This document shows, piece by piece, positions 18,774 through 60,500 of a stretch of 64,000 bases of DNA. Both the position numbers and the translations under genes were made by a program. This DNA comes from Perna viridis (lineage: Eukaryota), in the NCBI GenBank assembly GCA_037379345.1, contig CM074516.1, forward strand, positions 37,423,626-37,487,625. The letters run 5' to 3'. The notes beneath the pieces are model-generated. The model was not told the origin of the DNA, did no database searches, and saw only the letters and a program-made list of their open reading frames with translations. Numbering within the stretch: position 1 is the stretch's first letter; each line of letters starts with the position of its first letter.

Positions 18774-19356
18774 CTTCAATGACACAAATTATTTCACTCT
18801 GCTAGATGGTATTGTTCTCTTTTCTCTTTTTAGTAGTCAAATTGTACAGGTTTTATATTACAGAATTAATGGTTTCATTGAGATAAAAACAATGAATTTG
18901 TTCCTTGATTTTTAGATATTTAATGACAGTATTTACAGAGCAATATAACATCATTTATAAACAGAGCCCTATTTTTGCAATGATTCTGTTGTAATTAAAA
19001 GTATCTTGGTCAAAATCAAATGAAGTGCTAGGCAAACTAAAAACAGTTATTGAAACAAGAGTCCACAGATTTTGCCCTAATTACAGCATTGCCCTGGTAG
19101 TTCCTGACCTAGTTAAGAGCCTTTGTAGTATTGAATGATACAACAAATGATTCTCTTATTAGGAACTGGGTTATCAGTATTCTTTATCTTAGTTTTAATG
19201 GGATTTTTTAATGTGGTAGTAGGAGTAGTTTTATTAGGTTGAATAAACATTGAGTCTCTATTACAGTATTACAGAAAAACTTGAGTAAAATTGTCCAAAC
19301 AGATTAAATGTGGGATATAAGTCAGTTGTTCTGTTTCAAGTATTTTTTGTCCAGTT

Positions 19357-24367: not shown

Positions 24368-24516
24368 TTAACTTTTGCCACAATCAGGGCAGATAACTTG
24401 TCCTTCGTTCATCAGGAAGCCACGACCAACCATGGAAGCCTCACATTTGCTACAGACAAAACAATCACTATGCCAGTGACGATCTTCAAAGGAAATAAAC
24501 TTAGTTCCACCGAAAC
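24368..24516 (-). CDS. Lmpt: LIMPETin last exon: GFGGTKFISFEDRHWHSDCFVCSKCEASMVGRGFLMNEGQVICPDCGKS*
   Basis: tttcag|; TAA at 24370-24368; FHL2-like LIM6. Not in the ORF track. Confidence 0.93.
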
Positions 24517-27500
24517 CTGAAACAAAGAAAAAACTTTAATAGAGTGGGAATCAAAATATGACAATTTATATACCTGTCCATTTGTTCACTTAAGTACGAG
24601 ACAACTTGTGACAGTAAAAAATTACAACTACATTATATCAACATGTCCAAACTAGTTTAATTGTTCTTACTGCCTGATATTTAGTTAGCTGGAATGCACT
24701 ACATAATTTATCTTGTCATTTTTATTTCTTACATAACCATTCAAAATGTATCTCTGTTTACTGTGCTACTAGTATATCAGCACTAGCATTTTAACCAGAA
24801 TTGTTTTCTAGGAATTTTTCATGCATTCATTCGATATGAAAGTTCTGCAAATTATTTTAGGTGTCGTCTGAGGGCTAAGTGAGCGACTCCAGGGCGACTA
24901 TTTCGCCCGAATCACCCAGTAGTGGAGTCCTGTACTACATGCCTGACTCATACATGGACTTATACTTAATGAACGTATTAATTTGTTCAAGTCTCTCTTG
25001 TTTATTTTAATGTTATTGATATAATACTATTTACCTGAGATGGGTTGTTCACATCTACAGCATTTCTTTGCAAAAAGATTTCCATAGCATTCAGCACAGT
25101 ATGGTTTATCTTCCTTTGAAGTAAATTTCTCTTTGGCTAACTCCTTGCTACAACTAGTACAAGTGAAACATTCTCTATGCCAGGGCATGTTCTTGTACGC
25201 CACACCTCCTTTGTTAATCACCTGTAATATGGAAAATGGGTTATTTAGAATTTGTAAACTTCTTATAAATGTCTAACAGGAATGTAAAATATTTTCTTTT
25301 ATTAATTACATTGAAACCTGTTTAAACTAAAAGCACAATAAACAATTATAAACAAGTAAATATTTCAGTCCTTTCCAATTTCAATACATATAGAACTGAT
25401 ATAAACCTAACAAATCCTTCTGCCCAAATGGGCCTCATTTAGACAGGTTTTACTGTGTGCATGATCAATTATGTGTAAGTAAATATTTTCTATACTGTAT
25501 ACATGTATTTTAAATACTTTGTCACTCTTCAGGATTTCATGGAATTTGAAATTTACTTATGAATTGGTTTATATCTGTTTTTCATATTTATACTAAACCC
25601 GAAATACACTCTGAAATTTAGACCATGTTTATTCATTGGACTATTTTTACTTCAGCTTTTGTATTATAAGTTTGAGAGTACGATCAGTGGTCACTTGTAG
25701 GAATGGTAGGTAATTATGACAAAAATTAAAACATATGACCTCCAGTAAAATGAGTCCTATTTCATTCAAGATAACTTACTCCATTACACTTAGTACACTT
25801 CTGGGCGAATTGATCTTCATAACAGGGTACACAGACAACTTCGTTATCACGTGGGATAAAACTCTTGGTTCTGATTGGCTCCTTACAAATCATACAGCAG
25901 AAACAGTCCTCATGCCATTGTTTGCCCTTGTACTCAAACTTTTTCATGCCTGCAAACATAGAATATAATAGATTAACAAATAACCATGATCAAGGGGACA
26001 TAACTCTAATTTAAACAAAACAATGACACAAACTCAGGAAGAAAACAAATTCTAAAAGGATTTCTATTCTACTTAAGGATAAAATATCCTAGCAGTCACA
26101 GGTTTCAAGAAATTTTCTGAAATGATCACACAAGGAGAAAATGTAGGGGTAAAAAGCAAAATTTTGGAAAATGCAAACTGCAAGGTGTCTTCCTATGTGC
26201 AGTGTATGATGATGAACATAGGTAAACTATAACAAAAGGGAGTGGGTTGCTAACTAACCAAATGCCTCATTTAGTGATGAAACTAAGTGCTTTCACAACA
26301 TTTCAATGCTTCCAAGAACATAAGCCAGCTGCAACCCATAAGAACAGAGGACCCTTAAATTCATTATAGATCAGATGCCATGAATAGAAATCATTGAATA
26401 TTGAGACCCTAACGTTAGAGAAGACCAAAATTGGTAAAATGAAAATTATGAATCTGATATACTTCAGGTTTTTAAAAATACTGCAAGATGGTGGATAAGG
26501 GGTTTCTGGTACATGAACTCCTGTAATATCATGGAACATATGAAAAGATAACCCAAGCAATAATTGGGGGTATGAACTGATGTTTACTTGATATTATATA
26601 ATTTACAATCTTATGAAAAATCTGAAAAAGTACTTAATCTTCAATATGCAATACAAAGAACCCCCTTTTTTATCAGACTATTTCATAAAAGTTCTTAAAG
26701 CTCATAATAAAAAGCTTTAAAATTCTAAGAGACATCCAGGCATATTGTACAGAATATTGCATTGTAAACATGAAGATGCCAAAATAAAGAGGGTATCTTT
26801 AAAGGGAGCTGCACAATAGGAAACACCAATAGACTTCAATAGGAATAAAGCCTTGGTAATAATTCTATGGGATTTACATGCTGATCAGGGTTAAAAATGA
26901 CAAGACTCAATTTATCATTACCAAAATGAGGTGTGAAAAACTGAAGCAAATTGTTCAACTATAAAGGGAGGTCATGGTGAAAATGTGTGTAGTTAGAAAA
27001 ACCTCCATGTTTAGAAGGCTGTGGGATGCATCAATGCAAGATCATCATCTCATGTATGTGGCTACCTAAAAGCTAACTTAGGCATAAAAGTATAGTAAGC
27101 ACCTATATCAAAACTAACACTTGAACAACCATTATTACATGACTATTGTAACAATGTATATAATCTTTATGACTATATCATGCTCTAAGGACAACATCTT
27201 TTGACCTATATTTACACCTTACATAGATGTACTTTACATTTTAATCTAGTCTACTGTTTAAACTTCTAATTCAAGTGAAATAAAAAGAACAATTATCACA
27301 AAATTGTATTTCTAAGAATATTGAATACACTGAAATCAAACCTGAAATCGAGTTTGTATTCGCTCATCATAAGATATCAGAAAACTTAAAGAGTTATCTC
27401 CCTTAAAAAAATTCACCCCCACTGCTACAATTTTTTTTTTCAAGATTGAAAAGTTTCCTGTAATGGTCAATTTACATAGAAACAAGTAAATCAGTCATAA

Positions 27501-30500
27501 ACTTTCTCAAGTAAAACAAACAATTTCACCCAAGAAAAGTTTGATATTAAAACAATTCACTCCTAATAATTTTAGAAGGACTGATACTCATTACATACCA
27601 AGAAAAGAATTAAACAAAAACATGGCATTTTATTCCCCAGAATGTCTGATGACTCAATAATTCCAATTTGTTCAGCTGTCAGTTTAGACAATAAATCTAT
27701 AGATTTGAAAAATGAGAGATCACACGCCTGAACCCATACATGTTATATGAGAAAATCAAGAACAAACTAATAATATATCACTATAATGTGAACACACCAA
27801 AATAGTTAGCCAGACCCAGAAAGTTACAGAATGAGTGTGATAAAAGGTGAAACAAAGCAAGTTATATATGTTTTTGAAATATGCAATTATATAAGGCTCA
27901 CCTAAAACACATTTAACAAGTACATTTAGAATGTATTGCTCTTAAAGAGGAAAATCATATATTCAATTATCAATCATTAAGTTTCTTTCTTTTTAAATCA
28001 CAACTATGTATATGTTTATCTGATTATTCATCAGGGTTTTTTCCATATTTTTTTGTATTTTGATTATAATTCTTTATTTCCTCAAAGAAACTCATAAGAC
28101 AGACACCAAGTGACAGCAAATAGTGTTACCATATCCTCAAGTCCAGTAACCGAAAGAAAATAAAAAAAAATACATGATGCTGATCACCAATGCTGTAAAA
28201 CTGAAGCCACATTGAGCGGCATGCTATAGACTGACCTTCTTGTCCTAACCTCTCATCTCCTGTGTAGGCACGAAAAATATAGTTAGCACTGTAGCTTTAT
28301 ACATTTACAGTTAAACCTTTGCTCAAGATTTCAATATTGGTACATAGTGTATTGGAGTTTTATTATTTATTTTGTCAGTAAATGAAGTCATAGATTCATT
28401 AAAAAAAAAACATCTTTAGAGCTAAAAACCAATCAAAAAGAGATTCAAATAAAAATTCAATAATTAAGTTATAAATGATTCATCATTTCTGGGTTTTACT
28501 GTAAATGGGATAGAATAGTTACCAAGCAACAACAAAACACTGTCTAAACTTAGCAACTGAATTAAACCTAAATAAGTATTGCTAGGCCAATTCAAGTTAG
28601 TGTTTCGATTCACATCCCTGCCTTCCCATTTACAATCATATATGTTTAATATTCAATCTTTTTTAACTTAAAACTTTTTTTTTCATTAAAAGATACAAGA
28701 ATAAAACCCTATGTTCAACCACTAATTATTTAGAAAGGGGACAGGAATCTAACAATTAACATGAAGTGGCCTTAAATAGGGAAGTTAAACACAACCTAAA
28801 ATAAATATTAAAATGCATAAAAAAAGACACCAAATGAAGGCTAATAAATGGTAATATAATGTATCTGAACATGTAATGGTATCCATGGTATGATACAAAA
28901 AGAACTTTTATTCACTGGTATCATTTCTTTTCAGTAATATGTAGTTGGTTAGTCATTTTTTCAGGTAAATCTGAAGGGTGTTTTGTGGAAGAAGAAAAAA
29001 CAGAAATCTTATTTCAGTTTTAAATTAATATAAGCTCTGGAAATAAATGTTTAGAAAGCATTATGAAGGGAAGATAACTCTTCATTTGTAATAGAAAGTA
29101 TAAGTATTTAAACATAAATATTTAAACATAGACATCTGTCTTGTTCTAATTCATTTTCAAAATCTGACTACATTTTTAACAGAACTATGAAAGGGATAAA
29201 ACAGGAACATAAAGAGTCAAGGATATAATTTTTTTTCTGTGAATCACTAATGTTAAGGGATATGCCTGGTTTTTAGAAATAGCTGTCCGTTTTGTTCATT
29301 TAAACTTTAATGGTCTAGTGTCTAATCTCTTAAGGTACAAATAGCTCTAAAATCCATCTGGAGTTTCTCTATATGGTCAAAAGCTCCCAAAATCAAAAAC
29401 ATCATGGGAAATATGCGCCCACTAAAACCTTTTCAGTTTTTTATAAGCAAACAATGGAATTCTTCTTGAACACATTTAACAATATAAATAAGTCATTTAT
29501 CTTCACTGGTAGAATTATTTACACAGGGACAAAAATATCCAGATGATACATTAGAAAATAAATAGTGAGCAAAGAAAATAAAATGTCAAGAATTAAAACA
29601 ATCTTTAATTTTGCTGAAACAAAAATCTCATTTATTACTAACTATAAAATGCTGCAACATAGAAATCAAAGATTTATTAGTCATCTGTTTGCCTTAGAAA
29701 CAATAAAGAGTAAAGAATTATGTAATGTTATGTCAGAAGTGATACTCATTACAGAAATTTTATCAGAAGTTGCTTTTCTGGACTCGGGTTAAGGGTATTG
29801 CTGAGATCAGCATTATGTTTGCAATATAGAGTAATCCAGTAAAGCAATAATGTCACTAAGTGAAGATGACCTATAAACATGTCTACCTCTAATTCTGGTG
29901 TATGTTGGTTTTATTTGCACTTATTGCTATACATGACTAGAACTTAAAGTTTCTATATAGATTTCAGATATGCTATTCTAGCAGACTGCAATTAAATTGT
30001 TGAATGAGCACAGTCTAAGTTCTTATTTTGTTTCATTTGGCATACTTTGTTGACACATTTTTGGATATTATCCCATAATTATACAGGATTAAATACACTG
30101 TGGTTATCAAAGAAAACTCCTCAGATAAAACAGTCAGTGTGAATCAAAATATCAACAAAGCTAATACTGTGAATGTGTTATTGTTGGTGGGACACCACTT
30201 TTTGTGTTTTTTTTGTGGGTTCCACACTAAGCAATTCTCCTAAGCTAATCTAAGGAAAAAAATTCCCAACAGATGTGAAGATAGGGCAAATCTAACAGAG
30301 TTAAGAAAACAAGGCTATTGTTTGCTGAAATCGTAGAACTCTCTCATGATAGATCATTCTACATTGTTTTGTGTATTTAAGAAGCAGACATGTCAATCTC
30401 AACACAGCATCAATACACAAACAGGTTTTAGAAATTAATTTCACTAATAATTTGGTTCCAGCCTCCTTTAATTCTATAATATAAATACATATAATGTGGA

Positions 30501-33500
30501 TTTCATATCTTTCACAATATCATAGGAATAAACTTACAAGTGTAAGACAATTATTCAAAATTGAGACATAATGTCAATACAATAAACTTGTTCTTGGGGA
30601 AAACAACATAGAAAGAGCAATACATGTATCAGTAACCCCCAGACTGAATGGTATATCTCTACAGCATTGTAAAGAAATGATTCAATCAAGGACCAAAATA
30701 GATAAACAATAGAGATAACAGTAATAGTTCTTTTGGAAGTATCTGCAAGCTTTTGGTCTGGTTAAATGGCAAGTCTTCAAACATGGAGAAGTCTGTTGGT
30801 TAGAATTACTCATTTGAAAACAGTTATATAGGGTCCTTAAACAATTTTAAATAAAGGTCTTTTAGAATAAGCACACTGTCAATCAGGTATTCACAATCCT
30901 TAATTGTGAACAAAAGGTGTAAAGGAAAATAAATTATGAAAAAGAATTTTTTTTTTCAATTCAGTAAAATAAAAAAAAAGAAACAACAGTGAAGTCCCAT
31001 CAGTCAATGTATTCAATCACTCAATATCAATTGAAAAATTTTACATGAAAGAGTTACATTCCCTTACATGTTAATTTGCAGTAAATAACTCAATTTACTG
31101 AAATGATAACTTACACTGTAAAGAGATAGGTTAATTCATAACATGTTACCCCCACTGCCTGGTTTTTAGGGAGTCTGACACTAAGTGCTACATGGCATGA
31201 TGGTTAAAACAAGTCATCAGCCTCTAATGAATTCAATGAAGTTGGCATTTGTTTCAAAGACAAACTAAAAAGTGTGTACCAAACAGAATATGATGGATTT
31301 ATCAAATAATTGATAATATATCAAGATGTCACTGTTGATTATTATATCATAGTATTTTGCACACGACACTTAGATCAGTAAGGCTCATGCTGATCCTTAT
31401 TTGCTTTGCACCAAACACATTTGGCTTTGGACTGTATTTCACTTTTTGCACACGACACCTGAAAGTTCTGATGCACAAGCTCCAGACCAGAAAGTGCACC
31501 AGGAAGATTATGGAAGATTATTGCCTGTTATAATTAGAAATGACAAAGAAACTATCTCATCTGTAATTAATTACTGTTTGTTGGGTATTTATCACTGCAA
31601 AGACATTATGTATGATGATGTAAAATAAAGGGGCAGACAACCACTGCAATGACAGAGGTCAGAAATAAGGTACAGCTTGCGTTCAGAAAATTCTGTTACC
31701 TACATGAAGTTACAGACAGTAGTATCTTTGGTATTGTGTTTATTGATGACTTCCATCCACACTCTGGATAATGATATCAATTAATGTAATTAATCTGCAT
31801 GTAACTGGCTCATTATTACTTTCATTGCTTTGGTGTTACATAAAAAAGTATGCAACCATATGCAATTCCAATATTACTAATAAGACCGTAATCATACAAA
31901 ATATCTAGAAATACAATGTTTTATGAAGGACAAGATAAGTAGACCAGTCTACAGTGTGTGTCATAGAATGGTTAATATAATCAGACACTAGATTATAAGT
32001 GTTTTTTTTTTAAATGACAGACCAAAACAGAAAAAGTCTACAGAATTATTTAAAATAAAAAAAAACTTAATTAATTGAAATAAAAGACAAGATTGAAGCC
32101 TAATCAACAGTTATCTACCTTAGTTTTTAAACGATGAACTAAATACACATCTAAAATGTAATCAAAATCAGAACTAAGATGAGGAACAATTAACATTTGG
32201 GAGAAACATAATTATCTGGCTGATCTGTTTCATTGATGAGAAGCACCAAGATTCTAGTAAAACAGATGGCTAAATGCTTTGGTTACCTGACAAAAAACAA
32301 CATCATTAATAAATGAAAACATTACTATTATATGATGTAGAGAGAAATAGAATGTCTGCTGAGCCTTTTGATCTAGGAAGAATATGACCTTCAGAAAAGT
32401 ACAAACAAACAAAATCTATCTATGACCAAATTGGTAGTTCTACGTCAGTTGACGTCAAAGAAAGCCTTGGTAGGTTTACAGCAAAACAGAACTTTGCACA
32501 CGGCACTACTGCAACTTGTGTATAAATATAATTCATATTTGTTAATTAACAAGATGACAGAGAATGGTAATGAACAATTTGAGAAGACAAAGATCTTCCG
32601 CCTACTGTGGATACCTAACAAAGTAACAAGCTCAATTCACAAGGAATAATGTTTTCTTAACATTTGTTCTGGCACAAACTTACATTAGAAATATGCAACT
32701 TAATGAGTCATACTGAAGAAATTGTTACAGACATTTTGCAACAGAAATTGTCTAATTAATGCCAAATTTTATAATTTGTTACACAGAGAAAGTCAGCAAT
32801 TATTTTATACATGCACTAAAGAAACATGTTTAGTAAAATGATGTATAATTCAACACCAACATCTTCAAAAGATAGACAAGATCCTCAATTAACAGAAACA
32901 AAGATGATGAGACATAATTATTATAATTGGCTTTCATTTTCCTTTCTGAAAGTGTAAAATTTAGTTTAAATGCAAAACTCATACTACAGAGCAGTGTAAA
33001 ATTTTCTAAGATTATAGTTTTAGCAATATAAAGAAAGGTAGACCAAAGAACTGGTGTATACTGGTAATTGTTCTTCATCCTGACAAGTCCTGAAAGAAAA
33101 CTGCAAAACATAGTATTTAGTCGGTCAAATATGAAAAAAAAAGCAATACAATTTAAACTAAATTTACATCCAACTAAAGAATCTTCTTAATTCAAATGAT
33201 AGTTACCTCCCCTGAAAGGCTCTCCACATCCATCACATCTAGCAGCAAACTTGTTATCATGGCAGTCGGAACAGAAAATCTGGTCATTCTTAGGAGCAAA
33301 GGCTTGATCAACTAAAGACTTCTGGCACTCACAACATTTAAAGCAGAATTCATGCCAATGACGATCTTTGTACGACAAATCCTGAAATAAAAATGTATAT
33401 TGTGAATGTGATGCACTAATACTGGTATGAACTCAAGAAGTGGATAAAAGTACACATATAAAAAAAATACTTCATTACAAATAATTTGGATATCAGTAGG

Positions 33501-36500: not shown

Positions 36501-39500
36501 ATAAGAAAACCTTAAGTTATATTATCTCCCCTTGTAATCATTCGATAACAATTATCTACCTTATTGCACATCTAAGTATGATGCACAACTTTCATCAAAA
36601 TCAACAGGACTGTTAAGAAGGAGTTTATGAGGTACAAGGATGGATATTTTGATTCCTATATTTAAGGCCTCCAAATTGTTTACAATTTTCCTGAGACCTT
36701 ATCTCAGGCCAGAGAATAACACACATCTATAAAGTTATTAATTAGGTCTCATCATGTTATGATGCTTCATAAACCCAATGGGAAGGAAGGAATTGTGATA
36801 AAATAGGAGATGTGCTATGTTTATAAATATATACCCACTTCATGTGACCATGGCAATAGAAGTGGACAATACAGACGTCCTTGACATTACACATTACAAT
36901 AAGCCAATCAAACAGAAAACCTGATTTAGTGATATGGGAAGGGTTGTCATTTAAGTTGGGAGATGCACCCTGTCTTGAAAGGGGCTACATATATACCTAC
37001 TAGACCAAAGCATTATCAGGTCCCTACCAACTAAAGTGTTATTGTCTAGATTTTACCAAATAAAAATACAGAAATATGAGAAGAGACTTTTTCTAACAAA
37101 AAGAGTCTATAAAATTTTCAACAAATATTGTATGGTGGGTTATTTTTGCAATTTTGAAGCAAAAGATATATGAAAAATTTTGCCAAGCCAAGAGAATATA
37201 GTTTGTGGAATTAATTTTGGCATTTTCTTTTGACAGACTGCAAAAGTATGCAAAAATAAGCACACCACAGAAATCACCCACTATAGAGTATTTGAGCTTG
37301 TCACTGGTACCAATGAAGTTTAAACACACTTTGTAAATGGTGGCCATCAAATACCATCACACCCCTGATGTGTTACCAACGAAAATATTATGATTACATT
37401 AATGGTAAATAATTCATGTCTACATTCAATAATAATTTGATTACCATATCTAAAATTCACAAGGAAACACAGAACAGACATTACAGCATTGACAGTAAGT
37501 CTCTTGACAAAACAGTTTAGAAAAGAATCAATAAAATGCCTGCTTTAGTATTACAGTTATTCAGATGATAAATGTCAAATTCTGAACTTTACAAATTATC
37601 CTACACGATGTACTCAATTACGAATTTCAGATCACCAAAATGATGATGAGAGACTGCAACAAACATGAAGAACTGGTAAATAAAAATATTGAGAAGCCCT
37701 TTCGTCTTAGAACTTCAAACTAGAGAAACTCTGAATGACTATAAATATATGTAATATATAAACAAAGGAAAGTTGGAGATACAAGTATGGTACTTGGGTT
37801 TGTAGACTTAAAGGTAGGAAATGATTGAAAGGCAAGAAATTCATTGAAAAACAAAATGGAATTTAAACTATAATGGGTAAGGCGGGTAGATAATTAAATT
37901 TTCCTTAATTTTAGCCAGTCTTTCTAAAAAGTCTTTATTTTCTGTTGAGCTTGTATTTCCCACTATGCCAGCATTTTCATAGTTAAACACAGGAACTTAG
38001 AAATATGTGCAATGTCTGTGAAAATGACCATTGGTCTAGAAGAGTAAATACCCTGGCACATAAATTGGACCAAACGTTTATTTCAGATAAGAAGACCTTG
38101 AGATAGACCATTGATACAATAAGTTGAAAGGTCTTAATAACAATGAACTCTAACTTAAGTATAGATATACCTTATAGTCTGGACCAATAGGCTTCTTGCA
38201 TTCTTCGCAGTTGTGTGCAAAAGTTTCTTGGTAGCAGGGAATACAATATGGCTGTTCCTCTTTCAGTATGTACCGACAGGCAACCAGTTTCTTGTCACAC
38301 TGGTGACAAGCAAGATGGTCTTTGTGGAAGTTCTGGTCCATGGCTTTTGTGTATTCCCCCGAAAATATAAGCTGGAAAAGAAGAAAAAATCTGATAAAGA
38401 ATGAGAAAAGTTATCATTAATGCACCAACACACCAACTTTGATGGGCAGTCTCAGGGATCATTGTCAGCAAGGACAAAATCATACATTCTAACCTATGCA
38501 ATATGAAATACAAGTATCTTACCGACAGTGCATCAAAATGGAACAAACACTTCAACAAATGCAACATGTGCAAATCCCATTCACAAAACACTAAATCCAA
38601 GATAGATCTCTGATATTGTCTTCTCCTTTTGTAAGCACTACCTAGTTGCATTGACCTTTAGATGTACACCACACCTATACCCTCCAACTGTACACAACAC
38701 CCTATGATGCAGTTCACTTGCATACTACATCTTTAACCCCTCCCCCTACTTGCATTTTTTACTCCCTTGTTGTAAACTTACAAAGCAGTTGTTAGATAGT
38801 TACTGCATACAGTTTCATTCACAACACGGAATAATCCTATACTGTGTCATTACTGAGTTATCAAAATTGATTCCATAAATGGAAACAGTGGTTAATATCC
38901 TCACCGTTGGTTTGTCTGAAACAAGTCCCGATATATATACAGTTAATCACAAGTTATGAGTTCTTTGCTTCATAATTAATTAGCCTAACTTGGGTAATTT
39001 CCTTAATTTTTCCAAAACAGAGTACATTCTTTCTCGTGTAAAATCAAATCTTCTAATTCCTGCTGGGTACATGCAACAATGCTTAAAATTCAAATAAATT
39101 TCAATTTATATGTGAATAATTTAACCCATTTCAGTTTAATTGATTCATAGCTTTTTGTGCCAGCTACTGTTCACATTCTGTTTACAGCATTGCTCAAAAG
39201 GATAAAGTTACAATTTCCATCCCCTTATCAAGATATAAAATAAGTTTTAATGATTAATACAAATTGATTATGCATGGTAGTAAAACAAATAGTGTAATTA
39301 GAGCCCACACAACAATGCCAACCATACTGAATAGAAATGTCAACTGACTTTTTAAAGATTTGACATTTTCACAAACAGGGTTATTTTCTAGATAAAGATA
39401 AGAGGAAAGGATTAGATTCTATAATTTTATTGATCTGGACATTTTTCTGATTAATCTACAAAAACCATCCATATTGGGATATGACCTATAAACAACAGCT

Positions 39501-42500
39501 TCATAAAGAAAATTTACAATAATCAGAATTTCTCAGTGAGAAACTTCTGACAATTATTGTAAAGATCCATGAAGCTGAAAACTCAGGAATTGGACAAAAA
39601 CTCAATGGAATATGATTTCCGATTCATTAGTTACTAATAAAGAATGGCTTTAATTTCGATAAATTGGTCTGATCAGGCCAAAAAAAAAAAACAAAAAAAC
39701 ACAGAAACTTAACCAACCCTGCTTAGAGTAAATAAACCACTTTTTGCCCACTCTATACACTATATGCATAGTTGTCATTCCTTCTGCAAATTGCAAAAAA
39801 CATTTTCTAAAGAAGAAGATTTTACCTATCCACCATAAAAACTTTTTTTTTTAATAATTAGAAGTAGCTAGAAAAAAAATATTATCTTGTTTTGGCCTCA
39901 GATAGATAGCAGTAGAAACCAAATAAATCCAGATGAAGAGCACATAAATTTAATTTCAGAAAACCTAGTTCTGACATGACCAAAGGATTGTTTTATTACA
40001 GACAATTTACACCTTGTTTAAAGAGAAGGAAACTGAAAAAAATTATTCATACAATGTCATTTCAGTCTTGACACTAAATTACCAAAAAACAACAACAAAA
40101 AATAATAAAAAAATACTTAAAAAAAAAGACCCTAACGTGAAAAAAGCTAAGGAAGATAAACTCCATGTAAATCTGAATTCTGAATCAAAATGTGGAAGAA
40201 TGCAACTGGTTAACCTTTAACAAGGGTAAAAAGGTTGTATTTGCCATTTCTGCTTCATGTCACATAAAATCTAAAATCCCATAACCAAGTTATACATTTG
40301 GCTTTATAGCAAACATTGTGAAAACTTGGCAACAGTAGAACTAATTTATTAGTCTGTATCATAAACATGGAACTTTCATTGTCTCTCAATAAAAATCAAT
40401 GGGGCAGTTAATTCCCCAAATAGCTTGCACAACTAATGGAGAAATATATTTAAAGGGTGTCCATTTAGTTTGATATCATCCATCATTCTGACTGCTGAAT
40501 CTGATTGAGATATAAATAAAAACTTTTTGGTTTTTTGTAAACTAATCCTAGAGGATAGATGAGAAAGAGTGGGTCACGAAGGCCTATCCATCATGCAGTT
40601 TATCAATACTCAGGGTGGCACCATGATTGATTATGTATAGAAATCATGTTATTTTTTCCATTGCAGACTCTCAGACTACTAGTATTGCATTGCACAACCA
40701 TATAATGGTGTCATAGGAGATGTACATAATGCACTGTGAAACCTGTCTAAACCAACCCCTTACAAACTAAATGGTTTGGTTTAGGCAAGTCCTTGGTTTA
40801 CACAAGTTCAAAATGCAATGAAACTGATATTAAGGGACTTCAGAAGATGGTTTTCTCTTTACATAGATTCGGGAAGGAGAAGATTTCACTGTAATAAAAA
40901 CAAACTGCAGACAACATTACAGTATGATGTTTCATTGACAACTATAGACGTCATTTACCCCTACTTTGTAGGAGCTATAGTGATCATGGTGTCTGTCTGT
41001 TTGTCTGTCCACAACTTGTTTATTACTGCAACTACTCATAACAGCCACTTTTATTTGATTTCAGACTTAAGCGAGATCAACTTCCAATTTGACAACTTTT
41101 TGTTTATTATTTTACCATATGCAACAAAGTCACTGGGAATTGTCTTCCTTTTGATAAGTTTTGCTTATAGTTTTTCTAATTATTTAAAGGTTCTTAAACT
41201 TTACTGAAGGAGAGATTAGAAGAATCATAAAAATGGTGAATGGAGTTTGGTACTAATTCAGCATAGGATTTCATGCAAAAATATAGTTTATTCCAATTAT
41301 AGTGGTATATGGTAGATTCTTCTATTCACTAAACTAAAAGTATTTTATTCCTGTAATACATTTACAGCAAGTAAAATAGTTAATTTCAAGGGACAGATAT
41401 GGTCTTTCTTGAACAGACAGTTGACAAGAAGATTTTCAACTTCCTGTTATTCCATAGGCGTACAAGTTCTTCTCAACTGTGCAGTTAACTATACTTATCA
41501 CAATTCATCTGGTATCCAAGGAAGACTAAATCTATCCAGTGAAGTTAACTGTTTTATTCACTATAAAATGATGTTGCTTACAGACAGAATAATAAACAGA
41601 CATACAGTCTCCAATGCAAAAGCAACAGAAGTTTACCACACTTTCTTTACAATAATGCAAAATTGCTTCAATATCCTATTACATAAAATTGAAAACAAAA
41701 TCTTTGAAATGGCAGTTATCAAAATAACTATCATTAATGAAACTGTCAATAAATAGCCCTTCATTATCAAAAATAATGAATTAAGTAATTATAAACATAT
41801 GTTAAGCAATTATATCAGATAAACTTACATACTTTAAATTCAGCTACATACAGGATATATTATAGATATCTGATTAAAGATTCCCTATAGATCTTCCAAA
41901 TTTAGAACCAAGATAAAATTTTACAGAAACACATGCAAACTCACCTTGAATTTTTACCTGGATGATAATGAACTAAGAGCCTGATGCAAAATTAACAGAA
42001 TACCTAGAAAATCATCAATTTCTTTATATGTAATAGACATAGAGGGTAGTGTGCAAAACTGTGTGCAAACTATTTCCTACATAGTAAGTGAGAGTTAACA
42101 GTTACATTCTTCATGATAAATCTCCACAATCAATCAGACATATTAATCTGGCTGCAAAACATCTGCATAACTCATCTGTTTACTATCATAATATAGATTA
42201 TATGGTGGGATGAAGAGTACTGCCCGAGGACAGCAGGCTGAGAGAAAATAGCCTCATTGTTTATTTCCATTATATATACAGTTGAGATAAAAAAAGAAGT
42301 TCATTAGCACTATCCCAGAGCACTTTAGATAATAGAGATCAAGGTGTGAAAGTCATGATAAAAACTGCATAATTCAGTATGAACTAACAGTTTGGTAGCC
42401 CTAAAATTATAACACAAATATTGTCTGAGAATGGAAATAAATATTGAAAGTTCTAAATGAATGAAGTAAACCAATATCAAGTTTCTGAGAGTAAGAAAGA

Positions 42501-51500: not shown

Positions 51501-54500
51501 CACTGGAAAGTATACATGGAAGGGATTCCCAATTGCAAAACATCCGGCTTGAAAGAGAGGTTTACTGTATATTTTGTAATTAAAACATATTTTTTCTACC
51601 TAGTGCCATCCCAGAATCTGTGCACTTAAAAACCATCCTACATAAATGTATCTTAGCAATTGAAGAATTAACTGATAAATCTCTGGTTAAGATGATGTTA
51701 AATTAATCTGACTATTTCCTAAAAAATTTCATCATTTACATTTCATTACAACTACAGAACTACTTTAAGAAAATTATTATTAAACTGCTAAAGATTAGAA
51801 AGATTAAACTTCAAAATGTAAACATTACAATCGATGTGTTGCAACACAACATCCATAAGTACATGTATTATTTACCTGAGGCTTTTTTTCTTCTTCCAAA
51901 TGTTTAAAAATGTTCATATCCGTAGTGGACTGAATGGCCGTAGTCTTAACACCATCCATTTTGTTGAAGATTTTTGACAACACTATCCCTTGTCAAATTT
52001 TACAGGTAAAAGTTAACAGTAGTAAAATCATTAAACTGGAATGACTCACATAGTTAAACTGAAAGTACAGTAGAAGACAGACTGAAGGTACCGAAGTTTA
52101 ACATCCAGGTGGACTATTTATATACCTAATAAAATTGTATTGACCAGAGACAGGACTTGGGCTACGTATACACTTTTTATTGACATTGGTTATTTATTAT
52201 TGATGGGTATCATTTCATTGGTATTGAGTAATAATGGTATCTGTTTCTATATAATTAAATTGACTTGGTAATCTTGTGTTAAATAACTTGAGGAGAAGAG
52301 TTATGTAAATGTTTGGACAACACAGGATTTAAAGTTATAATATGGAAAGCATGAGTGAAATAATAATAAGAACCCTGTCTATGTTAATCTAAATATGATA
52401 AAGACTATGTGGAAACAAATCTTATGCCATTTTCGTATACCTTCAAACAGACAGCATACAGTCAATATATTGGTTGGTACATGTGCTGTAGTAAAGTCAT
52501 ATGCACTATGAACTTTAATGTCAAGAAGTCATGGGTGTAAAACCATAAAAGATGCATTGAAAACAGATAGAAACAAATATATTTACTTCAAACTAGTTGA
52601 TGTGCATATGATCATAAAAAATGAAAAGATTGACATATTGTTTGCTTAGTAATGAGTGAAAGATGTTTAAGTGTTTATGCTACTATTTGATTCCCAGATC
52701 ACCTATTCATACACAAGCCCCTTGATCATTTGTAACCTACAACTAAAGCTTCACTGTATTTCTAAAGCAAGTTCAGAAAAAAAAAATGGTTTCCATATCA
52801 GAAAACACCTGTCTACCCAATACACAATAACCTGATATCCCTAATACACATCCTCTACTACTTGATAAATACCTGGTAATTGGTACAAATTATAAAGAAT
52901 ACAAATAATATCTATATGCATTAGTGAACTAGGGTTATTTCCCTTCAAGCTACATTCTTATCATAATTGTGTTTTAGTGAATAGCTGCATTATCTTTCAA
53001 ACTACATGTATTTATCTTTATCAGCAAAACACCTGTAAGGGAATAGTTCAACATTGATAGAGAAAATGTTCCTTTGTTTGGATTAAAAGATACAAAATGG
53101 ATATGCCCAAATACAAGCCTGTCAAGTTATATAGTATGAGGAATTAGGCATTGGAATATACAGATATATATATATTAACAAATTAAGTGATTAAGCATGA
53201 ATGATAAGCTTTTAGTAATAATAATAATCATGACTTAATTTAGCAATGAGTAACATCACCTAGTACAGAATCAGTGAACCTGGGTTAACATATAATTGAA
53301 AGATTAATGCTTGCTACAACACACTTATATAAAGTTGTTCAATAATTTTGAAGTTTAAAATGATCATATGTTCTATCAGATAGATGCCAATTTTTTTTTT
53401 TTTTTTTTTTTTTTTGGGGGGAGCATGTGTGCCTAGATATCCCCATTAACAGTTCAGTATCTTTCTAATAATATTATTCATAATTACAATAACAAATATT
53501 ACACCATATTAATGCAGAGTCCAGTCTGCTCAATAAACTGATATACAGGCCTTTCAAATCTCTATAAACTACAAGATAATAGATGCTTCTACTTTACAGA
53601 GTGGCTGACATGTTGAATGTTTTAGGGCAATGACACCAGTAATATGTATTTGAGTTGAAGCACTTGCAATTTCTTATCTTTGCAAAGACAACTTGTACAA
53701 GAAAAAAAAAACTTTGTACCATCAACTTCTTTCATATGAGAATGTACTGCCACCATTTAACACATCAAGTGGTGGTCTACACAGTTTACTGCAGTATATT
53801 AAAGCCCTGGGCACAAGAATCTTCAAAAGAGATGTTTGTACTTGACATTTTTGTAGATCTCTTGGTGAAAGAGTGAATTTCATTCCAAAGTTCTCCATGG
53901 AAAGCATATCTTATTTCAAATTTATGCCAGTCTTGAAGCCCACATTTGAATGATTTAACCCTTTATATGATAATTCAATGCACTCAGCTAGTTTACTATA
54001 ATTGTACAAGGTCAAATATACAAGATAAAGTGCAATGATTCCCAAACCTAATGTATAGACTGAAATTAAAAAATACTTTAATATAATTTTCTCAGAATTA
54101 AACACATTTGCAGTCAGCCACATAACTTTGAATTTTCAATCAAGGCTTTGTCTTCAATACTAATTAGATATGAGAAAAAGAACTCAATATAAAGGCAACT
54201 TTTCAACAATTAACTTTCTGATATCTTAAACAATGTAAAGTATTGTGGTTATACAGTTGAGAAACTAAAGCAGTTTGTTTTGTTTTCCAAAAATGTTTAT
54301 AATGCAGTGAAAATATCAGATTCTGTCAATTTTTTTTTCAGCACTTTAAAAACAAAAATGTACTACCTTAAATTGAATGTGAATACTGTGCTGAACTTCA
54401 CAAGTCCCTACCAAGGCTTAATAGAACAGCAAAGATGAAAATAACTTTAGGGTTTACATTCCATATACTTTCTTTTTACATGTCACTAATGAACAAAAAC

Positions 54501-57500
54501 TTTAACCAAGGAGCCAGATGGTCTCCTTAAAATTTTCAATAAAATTTTCTCATACAATATTCTCAAACATTAATAGAAAACTTATCTTATTATTTGTGGA
54601 AAAAAAACCACACAGATAACAATTACTAATCCCATAGAAAATAGCCGTAATACTAAAATAACTTGAATTATCTCCCTTTAACTGGCAATTTGAGACATTA
54701 CCACATATCCAAGTTAGTGGTAATTAAAAACTCCTTTCATCTTAATAGGTTGAACACATGTTTTCACTTGCATAAAAATCTGTAGCTGTTTGTGTATATA
54801 AAACAAATGATTTACAAACTATAAGTATAAAGCTAATAAAATCATGATTCATGTTTTGTAAAAGCTATTATCTTGAGAAAAAAAAGCCACTCTAATAGAA
54901 AAAAAAATATTCAAGAAATACAAATATTAAAAAGCAATTGTTTTAATTTAGTAGAGAAAACTTAACAAATACAAAAACTGAAAATACATATCTCTTACTT
55001 AAAGAAAGACTACATGTACAATTCTTGTTTCATATCAAGAGCATTCAAATTTATAGTTCATGTACTAAACAATATAGTTAATAACATATTTTACCTTCTG
55101 AATTAAGATGTCATTTGACGTTCGATATGAATGAACAAAAAACATAATATTCTTATGACTGAAAGGGCTGGATTCAAATCAAAACAAAAGTACAGACAGA
55201 AGGACAGAGAATGGTAAAACACTCTTCAAAGTTTAGGATGTAATTAAACACTGTGAAAGTACATACATTCATGGATACCAATTTGCCTTGGTTAAGGAAG
55301 AAACACAGGTTCATGTATTCTTGAATTCATGTCTTTGAGGTTTTCAGTATACAAATCTGTGGAAATCTTTCTTTTGGGAGCCAAATTTTGTTGATTAGCC
55401 TTCCCATAAAAACCCCAAAAATATGTAAACCCCAAAAATAGATACCCAACAAACAATAGTACTTTCATAGTAAACAAACAAGCAAAAACAAACCTTGCAA
55501 CTTCGACCAATGACCTTAAAATCAATATTGTTCAAGTTTTATCAAGAAATAAATTTTGTAATTATAGAAGAAAGAATATAGAGAGTAGAATGTTAATAAG
55601 GATGGCCACCACAGGAGCAGTAGTATTACTACATGTACATAGTAATCCCATAGCCACTTCATTATAGAAAGAATAATTTAAGCAAGATAACGGTAAGAAA
55701 ACCTAAGCACGAAGTATTTTTGCAATAAAGACTCCCCCAAAAAGAGAGAAAACAAGATATCTGGAAAACAAAACAAACAAACAAAACAAAAAACACAGTA
55801 GGAACAATTCAATTCAAATTGACATCAGTGAACTAACCTCATCACATGCTGGACATCGTGGACGAATTTTTTCTGCATAATGCCTCTCACACAGCAGTTG
55901 TTTTCCATGGCAACCATAGACTAAGTCTACCAGCAGTTCCTCACAGTCTGTGCATACAAAACATGCAGGGTGCCAGCAGACATCTTTGCCAATCTTACGA
56001 GCAAATACTACAAGATCTCCATCATCAATTTCACCATGGCAATGATAACAGGTCTTAAAATACAAATAAAAAAGATGATCCAAGAAAGTGTTCATTGCAA
56101 TTGTTACTAAAGAAACAAATATAAAGCAGAACATGTATTATCTGACCCCTTACAAATCTACTGTAAACATAAATTGCAAATCTGAAATTATTGGAAGCAT
56201 AATTTATTGTAATTTTGTCATTTTTGGCAAAAGTTCAATTTGAGTTATCGCAATATTGAGAAAAATTTAGAATATCTAAAGATGAAATTTCAATAACATA
56301 AGTTTAAACTATTGCAATATCAATCCATTCACATTCTTGACAATAAATAAAATAATCAAGATGTCCTGTCTCATTAACAAGAGGCTCCCTGAATTGCTCT
56401 TCTGGTTAAAGTTTGTCTTTCAAGGGTAATAAATTTAACAAGATGTCCAACAATTTTGACTCAACAAGACTTTGGTAGGACTTATCATAAGGATCATTTC
56501 AACAATTGAAAGTTTCTTTCTATCTATTATAGGTTTCAAGATATTGGCTGAAAGGGCAATAACTCCAACATGGCTTAACGGATTAAAACCAAAACTTGAC
56601 CAGAGATAGATCTCATCATGCTGAACACTTTTACCCATGTCAAAATTAGCTAAACTTAACGGTTTTGGAGATATATGTGAAAAACTACTGTCTGACCACT
56701 ATGTTCTATTTTTAGTAACGGCAGCCATGTTTTTCAATGAATCAAAAATCCCCACACCAGTTCTATGCAGGATACCCCAAGGAACATTTATACCAAGTTT
56801 GGTTCTAATCAGTCAAGTAGTTCCAGAGGAGAAGAGTTTTGTACAATTGTTAACGACGACTACGGATGAAAACGATGGACGACAACGACGACGACAGATG
56901 CCAAGTGAGCTAAAAATTGTTTTCCAGGTCAACGGTATGTGGGATCAAATAGGTTCTGTTAACTATAGCCAGGTTTTAAAAAGAACTGTGGTCTGGTAAC
57001 TCTATTAATAGTTAACTTGATATTTGATGCATGATAATTTTAAAGGTTTCTTCTGAATGAAAATGTAAAGTGCATGTTCAGATTAAAATCTTAACATGTT
57101 GTTAAAAAAAAAATGTTAGGATGAAACAGTCAATTGGAGATTTTTTAATGTTTTTTAATCTTTTTGAAACTTGGTAAAGACACGTTTGAACTACTGGATG
57201 TATACCTTCAGGAAGTGGCCAATATCTACTGTGTATAGATAAATTGACAACTACATGAAATTTATTGTGTTGCTAAAAGGGAGACAATCATTGATTTTTT
57301 TTCCATTTTATTACCGTTTCTTGATCAGATTCCTGTACATATCCTATATCTAATGCTATACTGTCTCGAAGTTCCCGGAAAATATTGTATTCCTTTTTTT
57401 CTAGGTCAGAATTGATCATCCTACAGTGTTCATGAGCTAAGTCTTGTTTTGGTAACTGTCGTATTAATTGTAAATCTCTGTAGCGTTCTCCAGCAGTGCC

Positions 57501-60500
57501 AATTCTTGGAACTTTGTGGTTTGGAAGTTGGTCCATGTAGTCTTCTACCTAAGAACATATTTAAGTACATTCAATTCACTACTACTTGATAATTGTTTGC
57601 TGAAGTAAAAATACATGTAAGAATCAGGCAGGTGGTGATTCCAATAAATTTGTTTGTAGAAATTTCTATTGTTGAAATTCAGTCAAGGTACCTAAAACAC
57701 TGGTAGGTAACGAAATAGAGGGACAATTTTGCAGAGCATTTCAAACAATTTGGATCTGTGCTATAAAAAAAATAATGTGTCCTTATGAAAACACTAATTT
57801 GTTTTGCTTGCAGTTTTTTGTTGACTGAATAAAATGTGGGTTAATGTGGAATGCTTGAGGATTTAACTCGTGTGCGGAACAAGTTTCGCACACAAGTTAA
57901 ATCTAGGGTTCTTTGGCACTCGTGATAATATTTTGGTTATTCACTCTTTCCAATTAATTATTCTATTAATATTTATGTTCTGGCTAAACTACAACAAAAA
58001 GGTGCAGTTAAAAATATTACTAGTGCAAAAAAAAACCCACCAACTTATATAAAGACAGCTTTGTTTAATGAAGTCAAACAAGTATCAAAAATACTTAAAT
58101 CCCTCAAAGTATTTTAGGGTTATAATATATGTGAAAATAAATATGTCTTTACTATATCTTTAGCCTACATTGACAGGAGCATATTTATTAGGAATCTGAA
58201 GTACAATAGTCTTCCTCAACCAAAGGTCATTGTTTAGGAATCTGAAGTACGATAGTCTTCCTCAACCAAAGGTCATTGTTTAGGAATCTGAAGTACGATA
58301 GTCTTCCTCAACCAAAGGTCATTGTTTAGGAATCTGAAGTACAATAGTCTTCCTCAACCAAAGGTCATTTATTAGGAATCTGAAGTACAATAGTCTTCCT
58401 CAACCAAAGGTCATTGTTCAAGTTGTTTTACATTTTTCTTATTACAATATCATGTCATGTTGAAACTTAGCAGACGTCATAACTGTAACACATGCATCAC
58501 AACTATTATATAACAGAGTAAAGCAATAACCTCCAGTAAAGGGAGGAATTCAGGCTGATCTAAAATCATCCCTATTGCTAAAGTTTTATATATTGTATCT
58601 CATATAATTGAATTAATGAACATTGATTTTGAACTATATTAATTACTGTGGTATCTACATCTGAGCATAGTTGATAAGAAAAGAATTCAGAAAAACCTTT
58701 TGAAAGAAACACTGTTACTATAATTACATTAAGGCTTTCATTGAAGTCCCCAAAAGGGGGTTTGCTCATTTTTCTTTCAAAGGTATAAGTGTTTTTTATT
58801 GTTTGTAATTAGATATTCCTTGGCAGACAAGTTACGCACTTCAGAACATTGCATTTCTCAAGTGAATACCAAGTGATATAATATGTACTAGACCAATACA
58901 CTTCATTATGTTATAATGTGCTAGCTAACAGAACAAACCAGGATGAGACATGTACCCTGCCCCTATAGCCAATCTGTTGTCAGACTAGGATGAGACATGT
59001 ACTCTGCCCCTATAGCCAATCTGTTGTCAGACCAGGATGAGACATGTACTCTGCCCCTATAGCCAATCTGTTGTCAGACTAGGATGAGACATGTACTCTG
59101 CCCCTATAGCCAATCTGTTGTCAGACTAGGATGAGACATGTACTCTGCCCCTATAGCCAATCTGTTGTCAGACTAGGATAAGACATGTACCCTGCCCCTA
59201 TAGCCAGTCTGTTGTCAGACTAGGATGAGACATGTACTCTGCCCCTACTATAGCCAGTCTGTTGTCAGACTAGGATGAGATATGTACTCTGCCCCTATAG
59301 CCAGTCTGTTGTCAGAATAGGATGAGACATGTACCCTGCCCATATATCCAGACAGTTGTCAGACTAGGATGAGACTTGTACCCTGCCCCTATAGCCAGTC
59401 TGTTGTCAGACTAGGATGAGACATGTACCCTGCCCCTATAGCCAGTCTGTTGTCAGACTAGGATGAGACATGTACCCTGCCCCTACCATCGCCAGTCTGT
59501 TGTCAGACTAGGATGAGATGTGTACCCTGCCCCTATAGCCAGTCTGTTGTCAGACTAGGATGAGACATGTACCCTGCCCCTACCATCGCCAGTCTGTTGT
59601 CAGACTAGGATGAGATGTGTACCCTGCCCCTATAGCCAGTCTGTTGTCAGACTAGGATGAGACATGTACCCTGCCCCTATAGCCAGTCTGTTGTCAGATT
59701 AGGATGAGACATGTACCCTGCTCTATAGCCAGCCTGTCGTCAGACTAAGATGAGACATGTACCCAGCCCTTACTATAGGTCTCACTAACCACTTCTAACA
59801 TTTTCATTACTTCACATGTAAACAATATTCATACACTTTTGTAGTAAATTACATATATGGTTTAAAGTACACATTCTCAGCTTTATTTTGACTACTTTTA
59901 ATCAGTATACACACAAATAATACACTTACAATGCATATGTCTAGGTTCAGTGTGTTTTTGGTACTACATTGGGGGATGGCCATTTGACCTCGGAAGTGGT
60001 TAGTGAGACCTTAGCCAGTCTGTTGTCAGACAAGGATGAGACATGTAGACATGTAACCTGCCCCTATAGCCAGTCTGTTGTCAGACTAGGATGAGACATG
60101 TACCCTGCCCTATAGCCAGCCTGTTGTCAGACTAGTATGAGACATGTAGACATGTACCCTGCCCCTATAGCCAATGTGTTGTCAGACTAGGATGAGACAT
60201 GTACCCCGCCCCTATAGCCAATCTGTTGTCAGACTAGGATGAGACATGTATCCTGCCCCTACTATAGCCAATCTGTTGTCAGACTAGGATGAGACATGTA
60301 CCCTGCCCCTACCATCGCCAGCCTGTTGTCAGACTAGGATGAGATGTGTACCCTGCCCCTATAGCCAGTCTGTTGTCAGACTAGGATGAGACATGTACCC
60401 TGCCCCTACTATAGCCAATCTGTTGTCAGACTAGGATGAGACATGTACCCTGCCCCTACCATCGCCAGTCTGTTGTCAGACTAGGATGAGACATGTACCC

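What the first reader, a model, noticed from the sequence alone, without database searches (positions are those of the whole stretch)
41945..42069. Metallothionein-like internal promoter (MRE-MRE-TATA-exon-donor) that would drive an FHL-type 4.5-LIM isoform
Seen, on the gene's sense (-) strand: two tandem TTTGCACAC sites 12 bp apart, TATAAA about 20 bp downstream, an ATG-free stretch, then donors cag|gtaaaa and aag|gtgagt followed by a TGCATG (Rbfox-type) motif. The next acceptor (38371) has no ATG until gccATGg at 38341, giving a 283-aa protein (MDQNFHKDHLACHQC...) with half-LIM + 4 LIM, the FHL architecture. Known: TGCRCNC is the MTF-1 element, TATA-proximal MRE pairs typify metallothionein promoters, and each LIM binds two Zn. 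Inference: a zinc/cadmium-inducible promoter nested in LIMPETin makes a PET-less, roughly 9-Zn protein.
Basis: partly seen in the sequence, partly recalled or inferred. Interest (0 to 1): 0.8.

Follow-up and report, generated by a model that had tools for sequence, protein, structure and literature searches.

The report
Metal-response motif pair in LIM-gene intron
Two metal-response-like motifs plus a TATA box sit inside a mussel LIM-protein gene and match this genome's own metallothionein promoters, but the RNA I could check shows no transcript starting there, and the short FHL-type protein is made from a different internal exon.

Summary
Observation confirmed. On the - strand, TTTGCACAC lies at 42069-42061 and 42057-42049, TATAAA at 42028-42023, donors after 41958 and 41945, and TGCATG at 41937-41932.

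The motif layout is rare in the 723-Mb genome. It matches the promoters of the genome's own metallothionein genes: an MRE pair 12 nt apart, then a TATA box about 20 nt on.

The host gene also has three 14-nt extended MREs at 31.3-32.5 kb, out of only 21 in the whole genome.

The promoter-exon model has no transcript support. In probable RNA contigs, acceptor 38371 joins three upstream partners:
- the LIM1 exon, ending at 55838;
- an ATG-bearing exon, 51959-51876;
- a minor exon ending at 38782.

No contig joins 41958 or 41945 to it. One low-depth contig runs colinear through the MREs, the TATA box and both donors.

So a PET-less FHL-type isoform exists and is abundant, but it comes from the 51.9-kb exon.

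My reading:
- a real MTF-1 site pair, enhancer or conditionally used promoter: about 0.5;
- chance: about 0.4;

Metal induction and conservation were not testable here. The scan had already noted the 31-32.5 kb MREs and the alternative first exons on this same window.

The parts
42061..42069 (-). MRE-like site 1, TTTGCACAC. Core TGCACAC with a T-rich 5' flank, followed by A rather than the G usual in extended MREs.
   Evidence: The string agttTGCACACagt also occurs in the MT-like gene promoter on C7 (L005).
42049..42057 (-). MRE-like site 2, TTTGCACAC, 12 nt after site 1 and followed by T. With site 1 it forms an 11/12-nt tandem duplication.
42023..42028 (-). TATAAA, 20 nt after site 2. The distance is the same as in the genome's MT promoters (17-22 nt).
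41945..41997 (-). TGCATG follows at 41937-41932. No transcript evidence for it.
   Evidence: Sequence. No joint from here in the four runs laid. Contig 41882-42098 of run X4 is colinear across it.
38171..38371 (-). Shared exon: the second half of LIM2 (the FHL 'half LIM') plus the first half of the next LIM. The acceptor AG is at 38373-38372 and the internal ATG at 38341-38339.
   Evidence: Pfam LIM E=1.7e-9; LIM_FHL2-3_N scores 33.2 bits, below its 35-bit cutoff.
51876..51959 (-). Coding part of the alternative exon actually used for the FHL-type isoform. It holds an ATG plus 27 more codons, in frame with exon 38371, and its donor GT is at 51875-51874. A TATA-like TATATAAATA lies at 52124-52115, but the true 5' end is unresolved.
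   Evidence: The loose end at 38374 in runs X1 (depth 22.7) and X19 (depth 191.7) equals window + strand 51879-51908.
55838..56050 (-). LIM1 exon of the PET-containing isoform. Its donor follows 55838, and it is the canonical partner of acceptor 38371. The upstream boundary is approximate.
   Evidence: The loose end at 38373 equals window 55840-55869. Pfam LIM E=1.3e-9.
38782..39075 (-). Minor upstream exon, at least 294 nt long with an unknown 5' end. Its GTAAGT donor is joined to 38371.
   Evidence: Joint 38371-38782 with GT..AG on the - strand, seen in one contig of X1 at depth 4.4.
31356..32526 (+). Three extended MREs (TTTGCACACGRCAC) at 31356, 31445 and 32493. The last is preceded by the CRE TGACGTCA (32450-32457) and followed 19 nt later by TATAAA (32521-32526). 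They lie in a downstream intron of the same gene, on the opposite strand.
   Evidence: (3 of 21 genome-wide).
57288..57536 (-). PET-domain exon of the long isoform (open frame containing the exon). A further PET exon with the TWVP motif lies within 62532-62813.
   Evidence: Pfam PET E=1.3e-17. ORFs.
24400..33381 (-). Downstream LIM exons: about 33381-33207, about 25949-25775, about 25221-25030, and a last exon near 24.4-24.55 kb whose open frame ends ...ICPDCGKS, then a stop. They complete the four LIM domains.
   Evidence: Each exon matches the C-terminal part of the Pfam LIM profile.

Best explanation
The element is a tandem pair of MTF-1-type metal response elements with a correctly spaced TATA box. 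It lies in the 17.5-kb intron of an Etes/LIMPETin-type gene (PET plus six LIM domains) of a mussel. With three stronger MREs 10 kb downstream, it gives this gene an MT-grade set of metal-response sites.

The likely mechanism is inferred, not shown. Zinc-loaded MTF-1 would bind the pair. It would then either boost the gene's real promoters or fire the adjacent TATA box only under metal load.

What is shown is that this element is not the source of the FHL-type isoform in the available RNA. That isoform comes from an ATG-bearing exon at 51959-51876 spliced to 38371. It is at least as abundant as the PET isoform at that junction.

The 0.5 confidence covers both the enhancer and the conditional-promoter sub-cases.
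For: - The motifs are present.
- The same layout occurs at three MT genes, which match the mollusc MT signature as I recall it (C1; L002, L009, L010), and at one MT-like gene (C7; L005). In each, the MRE pair is 12-13 nt apart and a TATA box follows 17-22 nt after the nearest MRE. In L005 a third MRE sits between the pair and the TATA box.
- The layout is rare. There are 4 TTTGCACAC pairs in 723 Mb: one at the MT-like gene, two that are copies of one repeat family, and this one. There are 4 pair-plus-TATAAA composites, against 0 for the reversed control. My rough chance expectation is 0.8 for pair plus TATA, and about 0.03 if both T-rich flanks are also required.
- The gene holds 6 TTTGCACAC sites in 10.7 kb, against 0.1 expected from 6467 genome-wide. 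It also holds 3 of the genome's 21 14-nt extended MREs.
- The refined fly MRE has Ts on the 5' side and A at position 6. LIM genes csrp1 (mouse) and Mlp84B (fly) depend on MTF-1, and MREs sit before an alternative ZnT35C start (PMC1635269).
- The real FHL-type junction 51876|38371 is documented.
Against: - Both cores lack the G that usually follows true MREs here and in flies; they are followed by A and T.
- The two sites are one duplication event, not two independent ones.
- The pattern definitions were chosen after seeing the site.
- In flies, about half of the extended-MRE clusters lie away from any transcription start (PMC1635269).
- There is no RNA start or splice from the element in two informative runs (X1, X19). 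The only contig over it is colinear and low-depth.
- Conservation, MTF-1 binding and metal response are untested.
- Two other composite hits (L003, next to transposon-like frames; L004) have no obvious metal link.
Confidence: 0.5

Rival explanations
1. Chance. A neutral 12-nt slippage duplication in an AT-rich intron happened to create two MRE-like cores upstream of one of the very common TATAAA strings and donor-like GT sites. It has no function.
For: - TATAAA occurs 1.16 times per kb per strand, and donor-like hexamers 0.5-0.6 times per kb.
- The core TGCRCNC is not enriched in the window.
- I estimate that about half of the 26 non-MT TGCACAC pairs in the genome are expected by chance. The reversed control is even more frequent: 213 against 30.
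- Similar 12-nt tandems exist with no promoter context (L013), and two TTTGCACAC pairs are repeat copies (L011, L012).
- There is no transcript evidence.
- Neither core is followed by G.
Against: - The expected genome-wide number of pair + T-rich flanks + TATA at 10-35 nt is only about 0.03.
- The geometry equals that of the MT promoters.
- The same gene holds the densest cluster of 14-nt MREs outside one tandem array. That is very unlikely to coincide by chance.
Confidence: 0.4
2. A zinc/cadmium-inducible promoter starts transcription near 41995. A 40-55-nt non-coding first exon splices from 41958 or 41945 to 38371, and translation begins at 38341. The product is a PET-less protein with a half LIM plus four LIM domains, made mainly under metal load. 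This is a sub-case of the best explanation, and its 0.15 is counted inside that 0.5.
For: - The TATA box sits 20 nt after the second MRE, as in real MT promoters. For an enhancer-only element this spacing would be a coincidence of about 1-3%.
- There is a consensus donor aag|gtgagt, and no ATG after 42012.
- Acceptor 38371 demonstrably accepts several alternative upstream exons.
- MT-type promoters can be nearly silent without metal (general knowledge).
Against: - In X1 and X19 the acceptor's partners are 55838, 51876 and 38782 only. A junction of depth 4.4 was detectable, so any product from 42 kb is rarer than that.
- Contig 41882-42098 starts upstream of the MREs and crosses both donors unspliced.
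- No initiator-like motif lies 25-35 nt after the TATA box.
- An FHL-type isoform is already supplied abundantly by another exon.
- Contigs can miss rare forms, and the exposure state of the samples is unknown.
Confidence: 0.15

Closest known systems
Metallothionein promoters of the same genome (three MT genes at C1:7.529-7.548 Mb; an MT-like gene at C7:24.986-24.989 Mb)
   Same: A tandem pair of TGCACAC cores 12-13 nt apart, a T-rich 5' flank, and a TATA box 17-22 nt after the nearest MRE. The string agttTGCACACagt is shared with the C7 gene.
   Different: The MT sites are followed by GGC or GAC; these are followed by AGT and TAC. MT promoters lead within about 100 nt to an MT start codon. 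Here there is no ATG and no proven transcript, and the element is intronic.
Drosophila Limpet (Lmpt), Etes family, and vertebrate FHL proteins
   Same: One locus with a PET domain plus six LIM domains that also yields LIM-only transcripts. FHL corresponds to the last five LIM units (PMC6337844, PMC3305314). The TWVP motif is present in the PET exon here.
   Different: In this mussel the LIM-only form seen in RNA enters through exon 51959-51876, not through the flagged element. I found no report of metal control of Lmpt.
MTF-1-dependent LIM genes: mouse Csrp1 and fly Mlp84B
   Same: Zinc-binding LIM-only proteins whose expression depends on MTF-1 (PMC1635269). They are a precedent for metal-sensor control of a LIM gene.
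   Different: They belong to a different LIM class (CRP/MLP, two LIM domains). Their dependence was measured, whereas here it is only inferred from motifs.
Drosophila ZnT35C and ferritin loci
   Same: MREs lie in introns or in front of an alternative transcription start of a metal-regulated gene (PMC1635269).
   Different: In those loci metal response and MTF-1 dependence were shown by expression data. There are none here.

Membership tests
MTF-1-driven metallothionein-type promoter | Two or more MRE cores (TGCRCNC) close to the start site | tested here: met
   Two TGCACAC cores at 42067-42061 and 42055-42049, 20 nt before the TATA box.
MTF-1-driven metallothionein-type promoter | Extended MRE flanks: Ts on the 5' side, A at position 6, G after the core (PMC1635269) | tested here: inconclusive
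   The 5' TTT and the A at position 6 are met in both sites. The base after the core is A or T, not G. Two cores of the C7 MT-like promoter (L005) also have AGT after the core.
MTF-1-driven metallothionein-type promoter | TATA box with a transcription start about 30 nt downstream | tested here: not met
   TATAAA is present. No contig begins near 41995, and one contig (41882-42098) runs through the site. Contigs cannot map starts well, so this is weak negative evidence.
MTF-1-driven metallothionein-type promoter | Induction by Zn, Cd or Cu, and MTF-1 binding | not testable with these tools
   The runs are coded and their exposure state is unknown. No binding data are available.
MTF-1-driven metallothionein-type promoter | Conservation of the sites in orthologous loci | not tested
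   The exons are too short (about 60 aa) for the length-limited word search, and the large search was discouraged. The genome has no close paralog.
Alternative first exon feeding acceptor 38371 (FHL-type isoform) | A splice junction from the exon's donor to 38371 seen in RNA | tested here: not met
   There is no joint or loose end from 41958 or 41945. The junctions seen are 55838|38371, 51876|38371 and 38782|38371.
Etes/LIMPETin (PET + 6 LIM) gene with an FHL-like C-terminal part | A PET domain followed by LIM domains, with the exon after the long intron carrying the FHL-type half LIM | tested here: met
   Pfam, exon by exon: PET E=1.3e-17 and LIM E from 1e-9 to 8e-14 in five exons. LIM_FHL2-3_N scores 33.2 bits on exon 38341-38171, below its 35-bit cutoff. 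The last exon was read.

The most novel reading that the evidence does not exclude
A mussel LIMPETin/FHL gene carries a metallothionein-type, MTF-1-driven internal promoter. Under zinc, cadmium or copper load only, it produces a PET-less 4.5-LIM protein. That would tie a zinc-rich adaptor protein directly to the metal-sensing circuit.
Probability: 0.15. Interest if true: 0.65.

Novelty: new member of a known kind. Interest (0 to 1): 0.38.

Why it matters
Mussels are standard sentinels for metal pollution, and nearly all marker work rests on metallothioneins. If this LIM gene is a true MTF-1 target, it would be a non-MT metal-response gene with an unusually clear set of sites. It would extend the Csrp1/Mlp84B precedent to the FHL/Etes class.

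The comparison also defines this genome's own MRE layout: a TTTGCACAC(G) pair 12 nt apart, then a TATA box about 20 nt on. That layout can be used to find other targets.

The core claim of the finding, a new promoter that makes the FHL isoform, is not borne out by the available RNA. One locus giving both PET+LIM and LIM-only proteins is already known from Drosophila.

Tried and rejected
- **Repeat or transposon origin.** Rejected: the 401 nt around the site are single-copy.
- **Homology to an MT promoter fragment.** Rejected: similarity to the C7 MT-like promoter is limited to the 23-nt tandem itself.
- **Nested Cys-rich (MT-like) gene in the window that could own the MREs.** None found on either strand.
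- **Paralog-based conservation.** The genome has no close paralog of exon 38341-38171; the best other match is 39% identical.
- **Bacterial-type promoter and terminator scan.** Irrelevant and at chance level.
- **Literature on LIMPETin, or on FHL with metals in bivalves.** Nothing relevant found.
- **Eight isolated 14-nt MRE sites elsewhere in the genome.** Mostly without a TATA box or a recognisable gene, so of little use for calibration.
- **Gene of the C10 tandem array.** Not identified.

Full report
**What is there.**
Read on the - strand, the window has these features:
- TTTGCACAC at 42069-42061 and again at 42057-42049, 12 nt start to start.
- TATAAA at 42028-42023, 20 nt after the second core.
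- cag|gtaaaa, with the exon end at 41958.
- aag|gtgagt, with the exon end at 41945.
- TGCATG at 41937-41932.

The two sites read as AGTTTGCACAC followed by AGTTTTGCACAC, so they are one 11/12-nt tandem duplication. An ATG at 42015-42013 lies just after the TATA box. It is upstream of any start expected 25-35 nt downstream, so the ATG-free claim holds for the proposed exon. Acceptor 38371 and gccATGg at 38341 are as described.

**The host gene.**
Scanned exon by exon, the - strand carries:
- PET exons within 62532-62813 (with the TWVP motif) and 57288-57536 (Pfam PET E=1.3e-17).
- A LIM1 exon ending at 55838.
- A 17.5-kb intron, then exon 38371-38171.
- Four more LIM exons, down to about 24.4 kb.

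This is the Etes/LIMPETin architecture of a PET domain plus six LIM domains. Its last five LIM units correspond to FHL proteins (PMC3305314). Drosophila Limpet is already known to give PET+LIM and LIM-only transcript classes from one locus (PMC6337844). Other agents' notes call this genome a mussel. I did not check that independently.

**RNA test.**
One search found 15 runs guessed to be RNA, from five studies. I laid four runs on 37700-43600: X1, X2 and X4 from that set, and X19, a run of unknown kind whose contigs are mostly identical to those of X2. All are Logan contigs. Acceptor 38371 has three upstream partners:
- A loose end identical to window 55840-55869. This is the LIM1 exon and the canonical junction (depth 26.5 in X1).
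- A loose end identical to window 51879-51908. This is an exon ending at 51876 with GT at 51875-51874 (depth 22.7 in X1 and 191.7 in X19). verify the identity.
- A GT..AG joint from 38782, on a contig covering 38782-39075 (depth 4.4, X1 only).

The 51.9-kb exon carries an ATG at 51959. Its 28 codons are in frame with exon 38371.

No contig joins 41958 or 41945 to anything. The only contig over the element (X4, 41882-42098, depth 2.9) is colinear with the genome. It begins upstream of the MREs and crosses both donors. Similar low-depth colinear contigs lie all over the intron, which looks like pre-mRNA background.

The limits of this test are real. Contigs drop rare forms and cannot map starts. 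Only X1 and X19 cover the acceptor. The exposure state of the samples is unknown.

**Is the motif cluster more than chance?**
The bare core TGCRCNC is at chance level in the window: 19 found against 15.7 expected. The T-flanked 9-mer is not: 6 found against 0.7 expected.

| Pattern, whole 723-Mb genome | Count |
|---|---|
| TTTGCACAC | 6467 (one per 112 kb) |
| TGCACAC, 3-8 nt, TGCACAC | 30 (reversed control 213) |
| that pair with TATAAA 10-35 nt downstream | 4 (reversed control 0) |
| TTTGCACAC, 1-12 nt, TTTGCACAC | 4 |

I fetched the other hits, and they calibrate the layout:
- Three paralogous genes at C1:7.529-7.548 Mb encode proteins that match the mollusc MT signature as I recall it. 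All have tttTGCACACggcc(t/g)TGCACACggca, then a TATATAA box 17-19 nt on, and an ATG about 100 nt further.
- A Cys-rich MT-like gene at C7:24.99 Mb has agttTGCACACagtgttTGCACACgacac, plus a further MRE 22 nt before its TATAAA.
- The other two TTTGCACAC pairs are copies of one repeat family (L011, L012).

So 'metallothionein-like' is a fair description by this genome's own standard. From the counts above and the window's TATAAA rate of 1.16 per kb per strand, I estimate about 0.8 chance composites among the non-MT pairs. The estimate falls to about 0.03 if the T-rich flanks are also required. These patterns were defined after the fact, so the numbers are rough.

**Gene-level context.**
The same gene holds three extended MREs (TTTGCACACGRCAC) on the + strand at 31356, 31445 and 32493. 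Only 21 exist in the genome. Ten of those lie on C10 between 10.66 and 11.47 Mb, most of them copies of a roughly 28-kb tandem unit, and one is at the C7 MT-like gene. Their flanks are unrelated to one another, so they are independent sites.

The site at 32493 sits between a CRE (TGACGTCA, 32450-32457) and a TATAAA 19 nt downstream. Counting all sites, there are six TTTGCACAC in 10.7 kb against 0.1 expected. One of the six is coding, at 38213. That density matches the MT cluster on C1. It makes it reasonably likely that this gene is a true MTF-1 target.

There are precedents (PMC1635269):
- Mouse Csrp1 and fly Mlp84B are MTF-1-dependent LIM genes.
- MREs sit before an alternative ZnT35C start.
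- The refined fly MRE has Ts on the 5' side, A at position 6, and usually G after the core.

The same paper cautions that about half of the fly MRE clusters are not at any transcription start. Both cores here lack the G after the core.

**Weighing.**
- Shown: the motifs exist, they match the genome's MT promoter layout, and the layout is rare.
- Shown: the PET-less isoform exists and comes from exon 51959-51876. No spliced product of the flagged element is detectable where a depth-4 junction was.
- Inferred: the pair binds MTF-1.

My odds are:
- about 0.5 for a functional MTF-1 element.
- about 0.4 for chance.

The remainder is open.

**Novelty and score.**
One locus giving both LIMPETin-type and FHL-type proteins is known. 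MRE clusters outside MT genes are known, and so is MTF-1 control of LIM genes. At best this is a new member of a known kind, or a new variant if the metal-only promoter proves real. Interest is moderate (0.38). The motif case is better than usual because it is calibrated against the genome's own MT genes. But the central mechanistic claim lacks transcript support, and the decisive tests could not be run here: metal-exposed RNA, conservation and MTF-1 binding.

Noticed in passing
window 51876-52124 (- strand): ATG-bearing alternative exon (ATG at 51959, donor after 51876) that RNA contigs join to 38371 at high depth. A TATATAAATA at 52124-52115 and a TCAGT at 52085-52081 look like a core promoter. 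However, one 464-nt contig extends 433 nt past the junction, so the true 5' end, or a further upstream exon, is unresolved.
   Followed up: partly
window 38782-39075 (- strand): A minor exon with a perfect GTAAGT donor, spliced to 38371 in one run (depth 4.4). RNA contigs cover 38.6-39.4 kb more continuously than the rest of the intron. This may be another alternative 5' exon.
   Followed up: no
window 31356-32526 (+ strand): Three 14-nt extended MREs, 3 of only 21 in the genome. The last one lies in a CRE, MRE, 19 nt, TATAAA arrangement that points antisense to the LIM gene. It could be an enhancer or an antisense promoter.
   Followed up: partly
L002, L009, L010 (G000:C1:7.527-7.551 Mb): A cluster of three MT-10-like metallothionein genes with a nearly identical promoter: an MRE pair 12 nt apart, then TATATAA. 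The cluster has six TTTGCACAC sites in 18 kb.
   Followed up: partly
L005 (G000:C7:24984300-24990300, - strand): A second, different Cys-rich MT-like gene (one open frame of 68 aa, 25% Cys). Four MRE cores lie within about 250 nt upstream of its TATAAA, and a fifth about 1 kb downstream.
   Followed up: partly
L006, L007, L008, L022 (G000:C10:10.66-11.47 Mb): A tandem array with a unit of about 28 kb. The units fetched carry one or two MREs about 64 nt apart, and L006 and L007 have TATAAA 11 nt after the second MRE. The gene they serve was not identified.
   Followed up: no
window 50435-50948 (+); also L003, L004, L006, L014, L016: Open frames of one widespread repeat family, with motifs such as LLEQGYVATRLKSS and a Cys/Phe-rich hydrophobic frame. 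They recur in the intron and beside several of the fetched loci. It is probably a mobile element common in this genome.
   Followed up: no
window 800-15700 (+), 17691-18785 (-), 8197-9492 (+): Exons of a DEAH-box helicase-like gene on the + strand. An intact 364-aa single-exon frame that looks like a 7TM receptor. A 77-nt-period minisatellite at 8.2-9.5 kb. More tandem repeats at 14.0-14.8 kb and 19.3-21.0 kb.
   Followed up: no
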